From assembly GCF_036321535.1 (NCBI RefSeq), contig NC_087472.1, positions 2,108,001-2,172,000 of the forward strand: 64,000 nucleotides of DNA, written 5' to 3'. Positions 15,404-60,353 of this stretch are shown one piece after another (position 1 is the first letter of the stretch; the number at the start of each line of letters is the position of its first letter). Made by a program: the position numbers and the translations under genes. The stretch is from Camelus dromedarius (lineage: Eukaryota). The notes beneath the pieces were generated by a model that was not told the origin of the DNA, did not search any database, and was given only the letters and a program-made list of their open reading frames with translations.

Positions 15404-16760
15404 ATGCCTTTGAGCCTGTTGCAGGACTGGTGTCGGGGCGGGGTGGGGGGGGGGACATCTGAACACCTGGAGGTCCATACTCATTCTGGGGATTCCTGAG
15501 GCCTGTGGTGAGGATGAGTTTGAGGACACTCTTCAGGACACTTTCAGGCACCTGGGCAGGTGTAGGGTCATTGGCAGGATATTTAGGAGGGAGGAGAATG
15601 ACCAAGGGTTTCTCCTAGAGCTTAGCCAAGATACCGACTATGCTTTGAACCCCAGGGAAATACCAGGAAAGGGAGGGCCCTAGAAAGTGGTTGCAAAACC
15701 TTGTAGCTCAGATGGCGACTTTCTCAATAGACTGAACCGCTTCTTAGAGGAGGAGAGGTGGACAATGTCAGACATGAACAGAGTCCTTGGATCAGACACC
15801 AGTTGTCCTGCTCCGAGAGTGGCCATGTCACCTGATTTCTGGACCTGGGCCCAGGCCCCGGGGACAGCCGCACAGCCTCTGCTAGAACAAAGGTACCGAG
15901 AACTGAGAGTATTTTCTGGGAACACCATGTACATCCCAGGGGTGATGGTATTTTAAGCCTGGTTCGAACACACCACTGAGGTGCTACAGGGTGCCTGAAG
16001 GGGAGAAGAGGCGTTGGCTGATGGAGTGCTTGCGGGGCCCTGCCCTCCAGGTGGTCAGTGGGCTCCAGGCCCACAATGCTGCCCTAACTGTGGAGGAGTG
16101 CCTGGCAACACTGTGGCAGGCGTTTGGACCTGTGGAGAGCCGTAAAATTGCCCATGTGAAATTTTGTAAGGCATATCAGGAGGCAGGTGAGAAAGTCTCT
16201 ATCTTTGTGTTACGTTTGGAACACCTGCTCCAGAGAGCTGAAGGAGAAAAAACACTCTTACGAAGGAATGAAAATCAGGGTGGGGCCACCCTTACTGACA
16301 AACTTCAAAACAGGCTGATGAAACAACAAAGGAAGCCTCCTAGGTTCCTGGCACTGGTGAGGCTCCTGCATGTGGAGGAGGACTGGGAGACCACTTTCAG
16401 GCCAGAGAGAGGCTGGAGTGGCCAGAAGCAGGCATAAGTTCATCTGCCAGAGCCAGCGGTTCCAGGGCAGTGTCCTTCCCTGTCCCTGGATGTGCCCAGC
16501 AGGCCAGGCCTTCCCAAGGTTCCTGACGCAGAGGGGGCAGAGGCCACCACTGAAAGGAGGTTGTGCCAAGGGCCAGCACTCCAGGCTCAGGAAAACAGAA
16601 ACACCACATGTCCTGCAATAGCCGTGGAGAAGACGGCCACATGAGGGCACGGTGCAGCAACCCGGCAAGCCTGCTCTTGGCAAAGCAGGAGAGACAAACT
16701 GCCATTCAGTCGGGAAATGAGAGCTGGGTCTGGGACAAGACCCATCCCAAGCTAAGGTGA
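15404..16760 (+). pseudogene. PNMA3: PNMA3 (paraneoplastic antigen Ma3, Ty3/gypsy Gag-derived) pseudogene
   Basis: Pieces translate to PNMA3-like peptides from ATG 15404 (MPLSLLQDWCRG) through DGDFLNRLNRFLEEER and EGEKRRWLMECLRGPALQVVSGL to SGNESWVWDKTHPK. Lesions: frameshift in a G-run at ~15440-15455, TAG 15681, TAA 15954, frameshifting deletion ~15990, frameshift ~16405, TGA 16524 and 16551, second zinc-knuckle Cys changed to Arg. Confidence 0.93.
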
Positions 16761-18189
16761 AGTAGGCTCAGGAGAACAAGGCAAGGTTTCTTACTGTGGG
16801 CCCAGGAGACAAAATAGTTATTGGAAGAAGGGGAAGGGGCAGTCCACACAAACAGCATGGGGCTTGAGCGAGGCAGAGGGGCAGGGAAGCCAAGCCCAGG
16901 TCAAGCCTCCTTGTCCTCTGCCAGCTGAAAGGGACTCCATCAACCAAGCCACAAGCAGCTCAGTGAAGGCCAAGCACGGGGCTCTGAGGAGGTGCTGGTG
17001 ACCCAAACAGGGGGCCACCATATTTAGCACACGGGCTGCCCGAGCCTTAGAGACCCCAACGCAGCAGACGCTGAAAGGGTGTGGCCAGGTGTGTGATTTG
17101 ATAAAGCCGCCCATGAAACTCGACATATCAAATTAGCCTAATTATATGTAGCACCTCTGTTTTTATAAAGTGAAATCTCTTTTGTGATTTTCCAGGATCC
17201 CTCTTGGAAAACACAAATAAAACTTGAGACCAAGGATATATCACTAAGGATTTGAGTGTGGAAGGTAAAATTAAGAAGTTGTCAGAAGCTTTGAATATTT
17301 CTTTAAATAAGATGATAGCTCAGCGAGAAACACTACTTGTCTATCTACTTTACCAAAGTGACAAAATATTTTAAAAGTAAATAGAGGAGGCAACGCAATT
17401 ATAAAGAACCTTAGTTCTTTCAAAAGTGAGACTTGGTTCTCAAGTAATTAAGGCTATAATAAAGTGAACATAAAGCAAAGAAAATTATTCTGGTAAGAAA
17501 GAATCCTTGCTTTCTAGGCAGATTACTCAAGAAGCAAAGAAAAGCTTTTCATTAACTCTTATTGAGAGCACACCAATAATCTAAGAAACATGTCACCTTA
17601 TTAACAGAGAAAACGAAATTCTAGTTTTGCATCAGTGTGCTATTTGATATTATAGCTCATCTTTAAAACCTTATAAATAAAGCCATTGAACTTTAACTAC
17701 CATTGACCACAAGAAATAAAATCCCTTTTCTGAGAACCACATCCATCCAGGTTTTGTCCTACACATTCATCTTTCTCATTCTGGAACAACCAGTCATTTT
17801 ACTTTCGGACAAAATTATTCTTTTTCTTTAACAAAAACGCATTCTGCATACCTTCTATACTTTATTTAGTCTAAATCTAAGGTTTATTTTTTCTCAAAGT
17901 CTAAGGTTTTCAGTTACCAAAAGATCTTGGAAAGTATCTTTAAGGCTGATGTACTACACATGGAATATAATTACTATTGAAATAAAGTTTTGTGAGAATG
18001 AGTTCCCTTTCATTAATTTCTGAGAATTTTGAGTATTCAATTTATAAAAGCACTTAATTATCTCTAAACCAATAATAATGGAGCTCCTTGGGGTGATTTT
18101 ATAATCTCATTTGGTAATACCATCAGGGGTAGGAAATGTTACGTACACATATGGGCACACAAAAACATGCATATAAAATAAATAAAAGT

Positions 18190-19880: not shown

Positions 19881-20179
19881 GAGTTGTGGCCCGGGGCACA
19901 GAGAGCAACCCAAACCGCATGGGATTCCTCCCAGTGATCCTCGCCATCTTGCTTGGCATCCCAGGGGCTAGGGGCTGGAAGTAGGATCCCGCTGGGTCAG
20001 GCATGGCACCCCACCAGCTCCCTGCCATTTCCACACCTAACCCCGCCCAGAGCCACTGCGGTCAGGACAAGTGGCTCTGAGCCTTACCCTGGAGGGAAAG
20101 TGTCTTCAGTCCCACCCCTCTCCTGGCCTCCACCAGCTTCTACTGACCAGATGTATTCCTGCAATGGAATAGGGGGTGT

Positions 20180-22175: not shown

Positions 22176-24103
<1,928 letters not shown>

Positions 24104-37738: not shown

Positions 37739-38737
37739 ATGCGTGACCTCCACCACACTGAAGCCGACTTTCACGACCCAAGAGAGGCTGAGGATTCCGA
37801 GGATGAGCAGGACATTTGGGTTGAGGAGGAGGAGGGCGCATCCCCGTTGTCTCCCTCCTCCTCCTCCTCCTCCTCCTCCTTCTCCTCCTCGTCTTCCTAC
37901 TCAGTCCTGTTCCTGGGCAGTGGCGAGGAGGTGGCTGATTCTGGGACACCCAGTCCCGCGCAGAGCCCTCAGGGTGTCTGCCCCTCTCCCACAGCCGTGG
38001 CAGCCCCTCCCTGGAGCCAGTCGGAAGACAATGGCCTCAGAAGCCAAGGTGAGGAGGGGCCCAGCACCGGGCAGGACCCGGCAGATGCCGAGTCCCGGCT
38101 CCACGATGCATTACATTTGATGATGGTTGACCTGATGGGCTTCCTGCTCCACAAGTACCGCACAAAGCAGCCGACCTCAAAAGAGGAAATGCTGAATGCG
38201 GTCCTCAGAGATGACCGGGACCACTTCCCTGCGGTCTTGAGCCAAGCCTCTGAGTGTCTGCAGCTGGTCTTTGGGGTGGATGTGAAGGAGGTGGACCCCA
38301 GGGAGCACTTGTATGTCCTGGTCCCCACCCTGGGCCTCACCTACGATGGCATGCAGGACGATGGGCAGAGCATTCCCAAGACTGGCCTCCTGCTGATACT
38401 TCTGGGTGTGATTGTCCTGGAGGGCGACTTTGCTCCTGAGGAGGCAGTCTGGGGAGCACTTAGCAAGATGGGGCTGTGTGCTGGGAGGGAGCACTTCATC
38501 TATGGGGAGCCCAGGGAGCTCATCACCAACGTGTGGGTGCGGGAGGGGTACGTGGAGTACCGGCAGGTGGCCAACAGCGATCCCGCTCGCCACGAGTTCC
38601 TGTGGGGTCCCCGGGCCTACACGGAGACCAGCAAGCTGCAAGTCCTGGAACATTTCCTCAGGATCAATAGAAGGGGTCCCAGTTCTTTCCCGTCCCTGTC
38701 TGAAGAGCGAGTGAGTGATGAGGAAGAGGGGGCCTGA
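37739..38737 (+). CDS. MAGE-A family protein (MAGEA10-like, poly-Ser), copy 1, 332 aa from ATG (337 aa from GTG 37724)
   Basis: MAGE homology domain (LMGFLLHKY...LVFGVDVKEVDP...PKTGLLLILLGVI...EHFIYGEPRELIT...EFLWGPRAYTETSK) ending DEEEGA. Poly-Ser tract as in MAGEA10. Confidence 0.93.
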   Translation: MRDLHHTEADFHDPREAEDSEDEQDIWVEEEEGASPLSPSSSSSSSSFSSSSSYSVLFLGSGEEVADSGTPSPAQSPQGVCPSPTAVAAPPWSQSEDNGLRSQGEEGPSTGQDPADAESRLHDALHLMMVDLMGFLLHKYRTKQPTSKEEMLNAVLRDDRDHFPAVLSQASECLQLVFGVDVKEVDPREHLYVLVPTLGLTYDGMQDDGQSIPKTGLLLILLGVIVLEGDFAPEEAVWGALSKMGLCAGREHFIYGEPRELITNVWVREGYVEYRQVANSDPARHEFLWGPRAYTETSKLQVLEHFLRINRRGPSSFPSLSEERVSDEEEGA

Positions 38738-45002: not shown

Positions 45003-46001
45003 ATGCGTGACCTCCACCACACTGAAGCCGACTTTCACGACCCAAGAGAGGCTGAGGATTCCGAGGATGAGCAGGACATTTGGGTTGAGGAGGAGGAGGG
45101 CGCATCCCCGTTGTCTCCCTCCTCCTCCTCCTCCTCCTCCTCCTTCTCCTCCTCGTCTTCCTACTCAGTCCTGTTCCTGGGCAGTGGCGAGGAGGTGGCT
45201 GATTCTGGGACACCCAGTCCCGCGCAGAGCCCTCAGGGTGTCTGCCCCTCTCCCACAGCCGTGGCAGCCCCTCCCTGGAGCCAGTCGGAAGACAATGGCC
45301 TCAGAAGCCAAGGTGAGGAGGGGCCCAGCACCGGGCAGGACCCGGCAGATGCCGAGTCCCGGCTCCACGATGCATTACATTTGATGATGGTTGACCTGAT
45401 GGGCTTCCTGCTCCACAAGTACCGCACAAAGCAGCCGACCTCAAAAGAGGAAATGCTGAATGCGGTCCTCAGAGATGACCGGGACCACTTCCCTGCGGTC
45501 TTGAGCCAAGCCTCTGAGTGTCTGCAGCTGGTCTTTGGGGTGGATGTGAAGGAGGTGGACCCCAGGGAGCACTTGTATGTCCTGGTCCCCACCCTGGGCC
45601 TCACCTACGATGGCATGCAGGACGATGGGCAGAGCATTCCCAAGACTGGCCTCCTGCTGATACTTCTGGGTGTGATTGTCCTGGAGGGCGACTTTGCTCC
45701 TGAGGAGGCAGTCTGGGGAGCACTTAGCAAGATGGGGCTGTGTGCTGGGAGGGAGCACTTCATCTATGGGGAGCCCAGGGAGCTCATCACCAACGTGTGG
45801 GTGCGGGAGGGGTACGTGGAGTACCGGCAGGTGGCCAACAGCGATCCCGCTCGCCACGAGTTCCTGTGGGGTCCCCGGGCCTACACGGAGACCAGCAAGC
45901 TGCAAGTCCTGGAACATTTCCTCAGGATCAATAGAAGGGGTCCCAGTTCTTTCCCGTCCCTGTCTGAAGAGCGAGTGAGTGATGAGGAAGAGGGGGCCTG
46001 A
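45003..46001 (+). CDS. MAGE-A family protein, copy 2
   Basis: Protein identical to copy 1. Confidence 0.93.
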   Translation: MRDLHHTEADFHDPREAEDSEDEQDIWVEEEEGASPLSPSSSSSSSSFSSSSSYSVLFLGSGEEVADSGTPSPAQSPQGVCPSPTAVAAPPWSQSEDNGLRSQGEEGPSTGQDPADAESRLHDALHLMMVDLMGFLLHKYRTKQPTSKEEMLNAVLRDDRDHFPAVLSQASECLQLVFGVDVKEVDPREHLYVLVPTLGLTYDGMQDDGQSIPKTGLLLILLGVIVLEGDFAPEEAVWGALSKMGLCAGREHFIYGEPRELITNVWVREGYVEYRQVANSDPARHEFLWGPRAYTETSKLQVLEHFLRINRRGPSSFPSLSEERVSDEEEGA

Positions 46002-52457: not shown

Positions 52458-53456
52458 ATGCGTGACCTCCACCACACTGAAGCCGACTTTCACGACCCAA
52501 GAGAGGCTGAGGATTCCGAGGATGAGCAGGACATTTGGGTTGAGGAGGAGGAGGGCGCATCCCCGTTGTCTCCCTCCTCCTCCTCCTCCTCCTCCTCCTT
52601 CTCCTCCTCGTCTTCCTACTCAGTCCTGTTCCTGGGCAGTGGCGAGGAGGTGGCTGATTCTGGGACACCCAGTCCCGCGCAGAGCCCTCAGGGTGTCTGC
52701 CCCTCCCCCACAGCCGTGGCAGCCCCTCCCTGGAGCCAGTCGGAAGACAATGGCCTCAGAAGCCAAGGTGAGGAGGGGCCCAGCACCGGGCAGGACCCGG
52801 CAGATGCCGAGTCCCGGCTCCACGATGCATTACATTTGATGATGGTTGACCTGATGGGCTTCCTGCTCCACAAGTACCGCACAAAGCAGCCGACCTCAAA
52901 AGAGGAAATGCTGAATGCGGTCCTCAGAGATGACCAGGACCACTTCCCTGCGGTCTTGAGCCAAGCCTCTGAGTGTCTGCAGCTGGTCTTTGGGGTGGAT
53001 GTGAAGGAGGTGGACCCCAGGGAGCACTTGTATGTCCTGGTCCCCACCCTGGGCCTCACCTACGATGGCATGCAGGACGATGGGCAGAGCATTCCCAAGA
53101 CTGGCCTCCTGCTGATACTTCTGGGTGTGATTGTCCTGGAGGGCGACTTTGCTCCTGAGGAGGCAGTCTGGGGAGCACTTAGCAAGATGGGGCTGTGTGC
53201 TGGGAGGGAGCACTTCATCTATGGGGAGCCCAGGGAGCTCATCACCAACGTGTGGGTGCGGGAGGGGTACGTGGAGTACCGGCAGGTGGCCAACAGCGAT
53301 CCCGCTCGCCACGAGTTCCTGTGGGGTCCCCGGGCCTACACGGAGACCAGCAAGCTGCAAGTCCTGGAACATTTCCTCAGGATCAATAGAAGGGGTCCCA
53401 GTTCTTTCCCGTCCCTGTCTGAAGAGCGAGTGAGTGATGAGGAAGAGGGGGCCTGA
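52458..53456 (+). CDS. MAGE-A family protein, copy 3 (one R to Q change)
   Basis: Identical to copy 1 except LRDDRDH to LRDDQDH. Confidence 0.93.
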   Translation: MRDLHHTEADFHDPREAEDSEDEQDIWVEEEEGASPLSPSSSSSSSSFSSSSSYSVLFLGSGEEVADSGTPSPAQSPQGVCPSPTAVAAPPWSQSEDNGLRSQGEEGPSTGQDPADAESRLHDALHLMMVDLMGFLLHKYRTKQPTSKEEMLNAVLRDDQDHFPAVLSQASECLQLVFGVDVKEVDPREHLYVLVPTLGLTYDGMQDDGQSIPKTGLLLILLGVIVLEGDFAPEEAVWGALSKMGLCAGREHFIYGEPRELITNVWVREGYVEYRQVANSDPARHEFLWGPRAYTETSKLQVLEHFLRINRRGPSSFPSLSEERVSDEEEGA

Positions 53457-59354: not shown

Positions 59355-60353
59355 ATGCGTGACCTCCACCACACTGAAGCCGACTTTCACGACCCAAGAG
59401 AGGCTGAGGATTCCGAGGATGAGCAGGACATTTGGGTTGAGGAGGAGGAGGGCGCATCCCCGTTGTCTCCCTCCTCCTCCTCCTCCTCCTCCTCCTTCTC
59501 CTCCTCGTCTTCCTACTCAGTCCTGTTCCTGGGCAGTGGCGAGGAGGTGGCTGATTCTGGGACACCCAGTCCCGCGCAGAGCCCTCAGGGTGTCTGCCCC
59601 TCCCCCACAGCCGTGGCAGCCCCTCCCTGGAGCCAGTCGGAAGACAATGGCCTCAGAAGCCAAGGTGAGGAGGGGCCCAGCACCGGGCAGGACCCGGCAG
59701 ATGCCGAGTCCCGGCTCCACGATGCATTACATTTGATGATGGTTGACCTGATGGGCTTCCTGCTCCACAAGTACCGCACAAAGCAGCCGACCTCAAAAGA
59801 GGAAATGCTGAATGCGGTCCTCAGAGATGACCGGGACCACTTCCCTGCGGTCTTGAGCCAAGCCTCTGAGTGTCTGCAGCTGGTCTTTGGGGTGGATGTG
59901 AAGGAGGTGGACCCCAGGGAGCACTTGTATGTCCTGGTCCCCACCCTGGGCCTCACCTACGATGGCATGCAGGACGATGGGCAGAGCATTCCCAAGACTG
60001 GCCTCCTGCTGATACTTCTGGGTGTGATTGTCCTGGAGGGCGACTTTGCTCCTGAGGAGGCAGTCTGGGGAGCACTTAGCAAGATGGGGCTGTGTGCTGG
60101 GAGGGAGCACTTCATCTATGGGGAGCCCAGGGAGCTCATCACCAACGTGTGGGTGCGGGAGGGGTACGTGGAGTACCGGCAGGTGGCCAACAGCGATCCC
60201 GCTCGCCACGAGTTCCTGTGGGGTCCCCGGGCCTACACGGAGACCAGCAAGCTGCAAGTCCTGGAACATTTCCTCAGGATCAATAGAAGGGGTCCCAGTT
60301 CTTTCCCGTCCCTGTCTGAAGAGCGAGTGAGTGATGAGGAAGAGGGGGCCTGA
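59355..60353 (+). CDS. MAGE-A family protein, copy 4
   Basis: Protein identical to copy 1. Confidence 0.93.
   Translation: MRDLHHTEADFHDPREAEDSEDEQDIWVEEEEGASPLSPSSSSSSSSFSSSSSYSVLFLGSGEEVADSGTPSPAQSPQGVCPSPTAVAAPPWSQSEDNGLRSQGEEGPSTGQDPADAESRLHDALHLMMVDLMGFLLHKYRTKQPTSKEEMLNAVLRDDRDHFPAVLSQASECLQLVFGVDVKEVDPREHLYVLVPTLGLTYDGMQDDGQSIPKTGLLLILLGVIVLEGDFAPEEAVWGALSKMGLCAGREHFIYGEPRELITNVWVREGYVEYRQVANSDPARHEFLWGPRAYTETSKLQVLEHFLRINRRGPSSFPSLSEERVSDEEEGA

What the first reader, a model, noticed from the sequence alone, without database searches (positions are those of the whole stretch)
16825..17090. The PNMA3 3' UTR preserves a homologue of the PNMA5 -1 ORF, with frame-preserving indels
Seen: from 16837 the sequence reads [42 protein letters not shown]...RRCW*PKQGATIFSTRAARA. 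PNMA5 (from 23594) reads [42 protein letters not shown]...[19 protein letters not shown]. The first two internal indels are 3 and 24 nt; a stop and frameshifts appear further on. Inference: the transframe peptide predates the PNMA3/PNMA5 split and was under coding constraint, which supports a conserved two-product Gag / Gag-extension system.
Basis: partly seen in the sequence, partly recalled or inferred. Interest (0 to 1): 0.7.

Follow-up and report, generated by a model that had tools for sequence, protein, structure and literature searches.

The report
Decayed PNMA3 frameshift tail in camel
The stretch is the broken front half of the known "second reading frame" tail of a dead camelid PNMA3 gene, and it resembles the tail of the neighbouring live PNMA5 gene mostly because the two tails have been copied onto each other during evolution.

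Summary
Window 16837-17087 translates as quoted and matches the PNMA5 -1 ORF (blastn E 6e-45), with the 3- and 24-nt indels, then a stop and frameshifts.

It is not the 3' UTR of a working gene. PNMA3 here is a unitary pseudogene shared with alpaca. ORF1 is broken, the pseudoknot is damaged, and the tail is out of frame with the slip site. The tail carries a TGA and 4- and 1-nt deletions and has lost its 3' half.

The Gag / Gag-extension system by -1 frameshifting in PNMA3 and PNMA5 is already published. In ten intact genes from eight mammals the tail (RF2) stays open: 0 stops, against 79 and 62 in the other frames. All ten end at a homologous stop after a conserved C-terminal motif. Amino-acid constraint sits in the C-terminal part. 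The part kept here has dN/dS near 1.

The new point is concerted evolution. Just past the pseudoknot the PNMA3/PNMA5 distinction vanishes, and RF2 groups by lineage (anteater, lemurs, probably camelids). Similarity within one genome therefore reflects gene conversion and cannot show constraint since the split. The two in-frame indels are deletions in live PNMA5.

The parts
15404..16765 (+). PNMA3 ORF1 remnant (unitary pseudogene)
   Evidence: tblastn with otter PNMA3 gives 58-75% aa identity, against 45% for PNMA5. The match is split over frames 2, 3, 1 and 3. There is an in-frame TAG at 15681-15683. No long ORF is present. In the ORF1 tree it sits inside the PNMA3 clade at 100/100. Alpaca shares it at 98% identity.
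16712..16718 (+). Slippery heptamer remnant GGGAAAT
   Evidence: It aligns with G GGA AAC of the intact genes. Otter PNMA3 also has GGGAAAT.
16725..16769 (+). Decayed H-type pseudoknot (stem 1 16725-16735 with 16745-16754; stem 2 loop with 16765-16769)
   Evidence: In 10 intact genes the two stems pair in 89.7% of cells, against 56% or less when the partners are slid. The pseudogene is the only row with a stem-2 mismatch. It also has a 1-nt deletion plus substitutions in stem 1.
16751..16752 (+). 1-nt deletion between these bases; it puts the downstream tail out of the -1 frame
   Evidence: Only the two camelid pseudogene rows have this gap.
16837..17089 (+).
   Evidence: Identity is 83% to same-genome PNMA5 RF2, 74% to otter PNMA3 RF2, and 72-76% to zebra, warthog and whale PNMA5.
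16999..17001 (+). In-frame TGA inside the RF2 remnant
   Evidence: Alpaca shares it.
17047..17048 (+). 4-nt deletion between these bases (frame-breaking)
   Evidence: Seen only in the camelid pseudogene rows.
17075..17076 (+). 1-nt deletion (frame-breaking)
   Evidence: Seen only in the camelid pseudogene rows.
17089..17094 (.). Breakpoint: RF2 homology ends; the 3' ~55% of RF2, including the conserved C-terminal motif, is missing
   Evidence: From 17094 on, the sequence matches DNA lying ~5 kb upstream of PNMA5 in zebra (L004:4947), right whale (L011:2546) and warthog. It does not match DNA downstream of intact PNMA3 genes. No other RF2 3' half is found in the window.
22188..23522 (+). PNMA5 ORF1, intact (444 aa)
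   Evidence: Pfam PNMA_N and PNMA domains. 98% identical to alpaca PNMA5.
23477..23483 (+). PNMA5 slippery heptamer G GGA AAC, in the right phase of ORF1
   Evidence: Phase checked.
23490..23535 (+). PNMA5 H-type pseudoknot (stem 1 23490-23500 with 23510-23520; stem 2 23504-23508 with 23531-23535)
23477..24103 (+). PNMA5 RF2: -1 ORF of 208 codons from the slip site
   Evidence: It has 0 stops, against 8 and 6 in the other frames, and 0 stops occurs in 0.25% of shuffles.
23697..23698 (+). Site of the 3-nt in-frame deletion in camelid PNMA5 RF2
   Evidence: Only the camel and alpaca PNMA5 rows lack these 3 nt.
23717..23718 (+). Site of the 24-nt in-frame deletion in camelid PNMA5 RF2
   Evidence: The segment is present in all PNMA3 copies and in warthog, mouse-lemur and anteater PNMA5. 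It is absent from camelid and zebra PNMA5.
24020..24100 (+). Conserved C-terminal motif of RF2 (last 27 codons)
   Evidence: It aligns with the C-termini of all intact PNMA3 and PNMA5 RF2s and with the C-terminus of the 618-aa mouse PNMA5 protein. dN/dS is 0.19-0.57 in most pairs, against more than 1 in the off-frames.

Best explanation
Window 16837-17089 is the decayed N-terminal part of RF2 (ORF2), the reading frame that intact PNMA3 genes reach by -1 programmed ribosomal frameshifting at G GGA AAC plus an H-type pseudoknot. In camelids PNMA3 is a unitary pseudogene. ORF1 carries a stop and frame changes. The pseudoknot is damaged. A 1-nt deletion uncouples the tail from the slip site. The tail has a TGA and 4- and 1-nt deletions and has lost its 3' half. 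The neighbouring PNMA5 keeps the whole cassette, so it can make Gag and, inferred from the literature, a minor Gag-RF2 product.

The stretch resembles PNMA5 RF2 so closely (83%, against about 58% in ORF1) for two reasons. Both tails descend from one ancestral gag-pol junction. In addition, RF2, and only RF2, evolves in concert between the two paralogues by gene conversion. The 5' boundary lies just past the pseudoknot, near 16795-16860 here.

Across mammals RF2 is kept open. It behaves as a fast-evolving disordered spacer that leads to a constrained C-terminal region.

Shown: the homology, the lesions, the open frames, the phylogenetic incongruence and the dN/dS pattern. Inferred: that frameshifting occurs in camel PNMA5, and that the C-terminal motif is the functional payload.
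For: - Identity of the locus: PNMA3 orthology and broken frames; ORF1 tree, PNMA3 and PNMA5 clades at 100/100.
- Cassette: slip phase; RF2 of 204-338 codons in 10 intact genes; pseudoknot pairing 89.7%; the pseudogene alone breaks stem 2.
- Lesions shared with alpaca.
- Truncation.
- Open frame: (0 stops in RF2, against 79 and 62 summed in the other frames; P(0 stops) is 0.0045 or less in 9 of 10 shuffle sets).
- Constraint gradient.
- Mouse PNMA5 (618 aa) carries the RF2 C-terminus fused in frame.
- Concerted evolution, identities. Within-lineage paralogues are 82.5-99% identical in RF2 and 58-62% in ORF1. Orthologues are 56-82% identical in RF2.
- Concerted evolution, trees. Anteater P3+P5 and lemur P3+P5 group at 100/100. 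The AU test rejects PNMA3 monophyly at p = 5.6e-6 and 7e-76.
- Fixed paralogue differences: (128 in 1265 columns before the slip, 6 in 78 around it, 0 in 465 after).
- Camelid case. The pseudogene matches otter PNMA3 rather than camel PNMA5 at 376 v 61 sites in ORF1 but 20 v 41 in RF2 (Fisher p = 1e-17). The max-chi-square breakpoint is 16853/16861, reached by 0 of 2000 permutations. The pseudogene shares more with camel PNMA5 than with zebra, warthog or whale PNMA5 (38:13, 36:19, 33:14).
- Rate control. No other sequence shows that bias, so slow evolution of camel PNMA5 does not explain it.
- Literature: PMC5009743 and PMC11299033 (frameshifting in PNMA3/PNMA5 shown in vitro; RF2 disordered).
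- AlphaFold2 model of RF2: mean pLDDT 48.5.
Against: - For camelids the pseudogene + PNMA5 clade has only 57/91 support. The AU test does not reject placing the pseudogene with otter and flying-fox PNMA3 (p = 0.115). Only 5 exclusive shared states were found.
- Only about 250 columns are available for the camelid test.
- Sampling is thin: 8 species and 10 intact genes.
- dN/dS was computed pairwise by NG86. Gene conversion blurs which pairs are orthologous.
- No frameshifting or translation data exist for any camelid.
- The right-whale RF2 is riddled with frame changes although its ORF1, slip site and pseudoknot are intact. RF2 is therefore dispensable in some lineages, or that assembly has errors.
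Confidence: 0.82

Rival explanations
1. The similarity is vertical conservation of a transframe peptide under continuous coding constraint since the ancient PNMA3/PNMA5 split, with no exchange between the paralogues.
For: Both paralogues have the cassette in all sampled lineages. RF2 is kept open. The AU test for camelids alone is not significant.
Against: In RF2, orthologues are no more alike than paralogues from different species (65-76% against 68-74%), while paralogues from the same lineage reach 82.5-99%. PNMA3 monophyly is rejected. The part in question has dN/dS near 1. RF2 diverges as fast as or faster than flanking non-coding DNA: camel-zebra identity is 76-80% in RF2 and 82.5% for 17094-17677.
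Confidence: 0.1
2. The RF2-like DNA of the pseudogene is retained because it now serves a non-coding role, for example as part of a transcribed pseudogene RNA or as a regulatory element upstream of PNMA5.
For: Contigs of eight RNA-seq runs from two studies of reproductive tissue hold 88-93% of the sampled words of 16000-17300. Camel and alpaca are 98% identical here.
Against: The 98% identity equals that of the flanks, which are 98.6% for 17060-17700, so there is no extra conservation. The lesions accumulate as expected for neutral decay.
Confidence: 0.06
3. Chance or compositional resemblance between two G+C-rich, low-complexity stretches.
For: RF2 is G+C-rich (59-71%) and Gly/Pro/Ala/Ser-rich. 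Weak spurious RF2-like hits occur elsewhere in the window.
Against: blastn E is 5.8e-45. The match is collinear with the slip site and pseudoknot. The same stretch aligns across 13 sequences.
Confidence: 0.01

Closest known systems
Mammalian PNMA3 (Ma3) / PNMA5 (Ma5) -1 programmed ribosomal frameshift cassette (Wills et al. 2006 as cited in PMC5009743; Forni et al. 2024, PMC11299033)
   Same: The same genes, the same GGGAAAC-type heptamer and the same H-type pseudoknot. RF2 is a disordered ~210-residue extension with no similarity to Pol. PNMA5 in this window has every sequence feature of the cassette.
   Different: The PNMA3 copy here is dead and its RF2 is truncated. The published analyses treated each gene's RF2 separately in primates (dN/dS 1.04 and 1.13). 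In the text I could read they do not mention exchange between the two RF2s or the constrained C-terminal motif.
PEG10 gag-pol -1 frameshift
   Same: A domesticated Ty3/gypsy-type gene with a G GGA AAC slip site and pseudoknot that gives Gag and Gag-extension products.
   Different: PEG10 RF2 encodes a folded, strongly constrained protease (dN/dS 0.067 in PMC11299033). PNMA RF2 has no recognisable domain and is predicted to be disordered.
RTL3/ZCCHC5 frameshift, lost in simian primates (PMC11011659)
   Same: Lineage-specific decay of the frameshift-accessed frame of a domesticated gag gene.
   Different: In the camelid case the whole gene (ORF1 as well) is a pseudogene. The right-whale PNMA5 (ORF1 intact, RF2 scrambled) is the closer parallel.
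Recurrent duplication or gene conversion proposed for PNMA6E/F (PMC11011659)
   Same: Members of the X-linked PNMA cluster group by lineage rather than by orthology.
   Different: Here the exchange is confined to RF2, with a sharp 5' boundary just past the pseudoknot. ORF1 of the same two genes stays cleanly separated at 100/100.

Membership tests
PNMA3/PNMA5-type -1 PRF cassette: the PNMA5 copy (22188-24103) | Slippery heptamer X XXY YYZ in the zero-frame phase near the end of ORF1 | tested here: met
   G GGA AAC at 23477-23483, phase 2 relative to the ORF1 start.
PNMA3/PNMA5-type -1 PRF cassette: the PNMA5 copy (22188-24103) | H-type pseudoknot 6 nt downstream of the heptamer | tested here: met
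   The stems pair in register (89.7% of cells, against 56% or less when slid). Stem 2 is invariant in all intact genes. The structure was derived from these sequences, so the test leans towards it.
PNMA3/PNMA5-type -1 PRF cassette: the PNMA5 copy (22188-24103) | Long -1 ORF overlapping the end of ORF1 | tested here: met
   208 codons with a 46-nt overlap. 0 stops occurs in 0.25% of shuffles.
PNMA3/PNMA5-type -1 PRF cassette: the PNMA5 copy (22188-24103) | Measured frameshifting, or a detected Gag-RF2 protein | not testable with these tools
   Known only for the human genes in vitro and from ribosome footprints (PMC11299033).
PNMA3/PNMA5-type -1 PRF cassette: the PNMA3 copy (15404-17089) | Intact ORF1 that delivers ribosomes to the slip site | tested here: not met
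   There are at least 3 frame changes and an in-frame TAG at 15681-15683.
PNMA3/PNMA5-type -1 PRF cassette: the PNMA3 copy (15404-17089) | Pseudoknot and an open -1 ORF in phase with the heptamer | tested here: not met
   Stem 1 has a 1-nt deletion and substitutions, and stem 2 has a mismatch. The tail is in frame 1 while the -1 frame is frame 2. It also has a TGA at 16999, 4- and 1-nt deletions and a lost 3' half.
Unitary pseudogene | An orthologue is intact in other mammals, the disabling lesions are shared by related species, and the copy lies in the expected gene cluster | tested here: met
   PNMA3 is intact in otter, flying fox, sifaka and anteater. Alpaca shares the RF2 lesions and has extra ORF1 frame changes. 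The copy lies 5 kb upstream of PNMA5.
Concerted evolution / gene conversion between paralogues | Paralogues within a lineage are more alike than orthologues between lineages, in one segment only, with a phylogeny incongruent with the adjacent segment | tested here: met
   Anteater and lemurs: (100/100 support; AU p = 5.6e-6 and 7e-76).
Concerted evolution / gene conversion between paralogues | The same pattern for the camelid pair in this window | tested here: inconclusive
   For: 83% identity against 72-76%; a mosaic breakpoint with p < 1/2000; triplet excess of 38:13, 36:19 and 33:14 with a clean rate control. Against: clade support of 57/91 and AU p = 0.115 for the alternative.

The most novel reading that the evidence does not exclude
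The frameshift-accessed tails of PNMA3 and PNMA5 are a shared, repeatedly homogenised module. Gene conversion with a fixed 5' boundary just downstream of the pseudoknot has overwritten RF2 independently in Xenarthra, lemurs and camelids, while the Gag parts diverged freely. RF2 works as a disordered spacer whose only strongly constrained payload is a ~30-residue C-terminal motif. In warthog PNMA5 that motif reads [28 protein letters not shown], and in mouse it is fused constitutively to Gag. If so, published dN/dS > 1 and 'positive selection' signals in RF2 may partly be conversion artefacts, and the motif is the place to look for the long isoform's function.
Probability: 0.55. Interest if true: 0.5.

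Novelty: already known. Interest (0 to 1): 0.33.

Why it matters
Here it rests on a pseudogene remnant.

Three results from this follow-up are useful to people working on these genes.
1. RF2 of the two paralogues is not independent data, because it evolves in concert. Selection analyses of RF2 done gene by gene need recombination-aware and paralogue-aware trees.
2. Constraint in RF2 is concentrated in the C-terminal third. That gives a concrete target for testing what the long isoform does.
3. Natural losses exist. Camelid PNMA3 is wholly lost, and the right-whale PNMA5 tail may be lost alone. The tail is therefore dispensable in some lineages.

Tried and rejected
Transcription of the pseudogene therefore rests only on word shares in RNA-seq contigs and is unverified.
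- Two encoding-contig look-ups (elephant and armadillo PNMA5) returned no DNA. One look-up timed out and was repeated.
- Pfam found no family for the 229-aa -1 ORF.
- AlphaFold2 on an 8-row alignment gave pLDDT 48.5 and no fold, so no fold search was run.
- The Wills et al. 2006 paper is not held. It is cited through PMC5009743 and PMC11299033.
- A full-text search for 'PNMA5' plus 'gene conversion' found only the PNMA6E/F remark in PMC11011659.
- The earlier-findings search by words gave nothing relevant.
- A transposon insertion splitting RF2 was considered. It was rejected because no RF2 3' half lies anywhere else in the window.
- Slow evolution of camel PNMA5 as the cause of the 83% identity was rejected by the relative-rate control.
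- The count of exclusive shared states (5 for pseudogene and camel PNMA5, against a background of 0-3) was too weak to use alone.

Full report
**What is in the window.**
The best protein match shows a camelid X-linked PNMA cluster. The 444-aa ORF at 22188-23522 is 98% identical to alpaca PNMA5. A Camelus ferus hypothetical protein matches the PNMA5 -1 ORF at 99%. PNMA5 has the Pfam PNMA_N and PNMA domains.

About 5 kb upstream, 15404-16765 is the orthologue of PNMA3. It matches otter PNMA3 at 58-75% amino-acid identity, against 45% for PNMA5. The match is spread over frames 2, 3, 1 and 3. It contains an in-frame TAG at 15681-15683, and no long ORF survives. In a tree of ORF1 it sits inside a PNMA3 clade with 100/100 support. 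Alpaca carries the same copy at 98% identity, with further frame changes of its own.

**Check of the observation.**
The two quoted translations are exact. The DNA match of 16708-17087 to 23473-23822 has E 5.8e-45. The indels are 1, 9, 3 and 24 nt and then 4, 1 and 4 nt.

Two corrections apply. First, the quoted frame is not the -1 frame of the slippery site at 16712-16718, because a 1-nt deletion at 16751/16752 lies between them. Second, homology stops near 17089. From 17094 the sequence matches DNA that lies about 5 kb upstream of PNMA5 in zebra, right whale and warthog. It does not match DNA downstream of intact PNMA3 genes. No other copy of the RF2 3' half exists in the window. About 55% of the tail, including its best-conserved part, is therefore lost.

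**What the stretch is.**
I fetched genomic loci for:
- PNMA5 of alpaca, warthog, zebra, anteater, right whale and mouse lemur;
- PNMA3 of otter, flying fox, sifaka and anteater.

Every gene has G GGA AAC (GGGAAAT in otter) in the correct phase. In ten of the eleven the -1 frame (RF2) runs 204-338 codons to a homologous stop. Six nucleotides after the heptamer lies an H-type pseudoknot. Its pairs hold in 89.7% of cells, against 56% or less when the partners are slid. Stem 2 is invariant in all intact genes.

This is the published Ma3/Ma5 frameshift cassette (PMC5009743; PMC11299033).

In the camelid pseudogene, stem 1 carries the 1-nt deletion and substitutions, and stem 2 carries a mismatch. 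The tail has a TGA (16999-17001), a 4-nt deletion (17047/48) and a 1-nt deletion (17075/76). Alpaca shares all of these lesions.

**Is RF2 under coding constraint?**
Three tests bear on this.
- Stops. Across the ten intact genes the RF2 frame has no stop, while the other two frames hold 79 and 62 stops in total. Shuffles of each sequence give zero stops in 0-0.45% of trials for nine genes and 2% for the tenth.
- Length and frame. The genes differ in length through many indels, including a 121-codon in-frame insert in anteater PNMA5. All still end at the homologous stop.
- Fusion in mouse. The 618-aa mouse PNMA5 protein carries the RF2 C-terminus fused in frame to Gag.

The frame is therefore maintained. 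Amino-acid constraint is uneven (pairwise NG86, with the two off-frames as controls):
- N-terminal part, the only part left in the camel pseudogene: dN/dS 0.54-1.55 (median near 0.9), indistinguishable from the off-frames.
- Middle part: 0.37-0.80.
- Last 35 codons: mostly 0.19-0.57, while the off-frames are mostly above 1.

AlphaFold2 gives no fold (pLDDT 48.5) and Pfam gives no family. Both agree with the published view that RF2 is disordered.

The right-whale PNMA5 keeps ORF1, the heptamer and the pseudoknot, but its RF2 is spread over five or more frame changes. This is either lineage-specific loss or assembly error. A gray-whale protein model is contiguous over much of the same region.

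**Why the two tails look so alike here.**
Identities by segment are as follows.

| Segment | Paralogues (P3 v P5) | Orthologues |
|---|---|---|
| ORF1 | 58-62% in every comparison | 77-86% |
| RF2 | 68-74% between lineages | 56-82% |
| RF2, within one lineage | 87 and 99% (anteater), 86 and 90% (lemurs), 82.5% (camel) | not applicable |

In RF2, orthologues and paralogues from different lineages are about equally alike, and paralogues within a lineage are much closer.

RF2 trees pair anteater P3 with P5, and lemur P3 with P5, at 100/100. The AU test rejects PNMA3 monophyly at p = 5.6e-6 for the N-part and 7e-76 for the C-part.

Fixed PNMA3/PNMA5 differences number 128 in 1265 columns before the heptamer, 6 in 78 from the heptamer to about 40 nt past the PNMA5 stop, and 0 in 465 beyond. 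The last one lies at 16793 / 23559. The paralogue-specific differences around the slip site show that the cassette itself was inherited vertically in each gene since the split. RF2 has been homogenised repeatedly.

**The camelid pair.**
- The pseudogene agrees with otter PNMA3 rather than camel PNMA5 at 376 v 61 sites in ORF1, but at 20 v 41 sites in the RF2 stretch (Fisher p = 1e-17).
- The max-chi-square breakpoint lies at 16853/16861 and was reached by 0 of 2000 permutations.
- The pseudogene shares more states with camel PNMA5 than with zebra, warthog or whale PNMA5: 38:13, 36:19 and 33:14.
- No other reference sequence shows such a bias, so slow evolution of camel PNMA5 is not the cause.
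- The ML tree makes the pair sisters, but with support of only 57/91. The AU test does not reject the alternative (p = 0.115).

I rate conversion in the camelid stem lineage at about 0.75-0.8.

**The indels.**
- The 9-nt difference is a PNMA3-type feature lying 5' of the conversion boundary.
- The 3-nt gap is a deletion private to camelid PNMA5.
- The 24-nt gap is a deletion in camelid PNMA5, also seen in zebra PNMA5. The segment is present in all PNMA3 copies and in warthog, mouse-lemur and anteater PNMA5.

The frame-preserving indels are thus events in the living gene. All indels private to the pseudogene are 1 or 4 nt. That pattern fits constraint on the frame of PNMA5 RF2. Two events alone are weak evidence, and the cross-species data carry the argument.

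**Expression.**
Nothing could be laid, and those places were not sent to any search tool afterwards. Transcription is suggested but not shown.

**Verdict.**
The inferred two-product system is real but already published. Here it is seen through the wreck of a pseudogene. Its within-genome similarity mainly reflects gene conversion and does not show long-held constraint.

The modestly new points are the concerted evolution confined to RF2 and the constrained C-terminal motif. I found no report of either in the held literature.

Noticed in passing
L003:18284-20535 (warthog, 7-9 kb downstream of PNMA5): A PNMA6-like gene ends with an in-phase G GGA AAC at 20131. It is followed by a GGGGCT/AGCCCC stem, a TAGGCTCAG element and an ~80-codon open -1 frame with weak similarity to RF2 (E 7e-5). 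The frameshift cassette may be older than the PNMA3/5/6 splits, or a vestige may survive in PNMA6-type genes.
   Followed up: partly
L011:11290-11990 (right whale PNMA5): ORF1, the heptamer and the pseudoknot are intact. RF2 is scattered over at least 5 frame changes plus a stop. A gray-whale protein model (P0131) is contiguous over much of the same region. This is either recent loss of the tail alone or assembly error at G/C runs.
   Followed up: partly
P0127 (zebra protein named 'PNMA8B isoform X2'): The model joins the first 48 residues of PNMA3 directly to a PNMA3-type RF2 peptide. No PNMA3 body lies within 10 kb upstream of zebra PNMA5. Zebra PNMA3 may be internally deleted, or RF2 may be reached by splicing there. 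A cheetah PNMA3 isoform X2 (P0096) also ends in the RF2 region, read in another frame.
   Followed up: no
L001 and L002 (alpaca, 286 kb apart on one chromosome): The whole pseudo-PNMA3 plus PNMA5 block is present twice with identical PNMA5 protein. This is either a segmental duplication in alpaca or an assembly duplication.
   Followed up: no
L010:5287-6303 (anteater PNMA5 RF2): An in-frame internal insert of 121 codons duplicates part of RF2 and adds a Pro/Gly/Leu-rich repeat. The frame stays open for 338 codons.
   Followed up: no
window 17094-17700: This DNA abuts the truncated RF2. It matches DNA ~5 kb upstream of PNMA5 in zebra, whale and warthog, and a second inverted copy in the zebra locus (L004:15884-15301, 73%). 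It is probably an old interspersed repeat. An AATAAA lies at 17216-17221.
   Followed up: partly
window 37850-38095, 45114-45359, 52569-52814, 59466-59711: Four equally spaced weak tblastn hits (E 0.009) to RF2. They mark a tandem array with a period of about 7.0-7.5 kb, whose units also contain masked N runs. The resemblance to RF2 is probably compositional.
   Followed up: no
P0075 (mouse PNMA5, 618 aa), P0076 (Nannospalax): In these rodents the ORF1 stop is gone and RF2, with its conserved C-terminus, is read in the zero frame. The tail that other mammals reach by frameshifting is constitutive there.
   Followed up: partly
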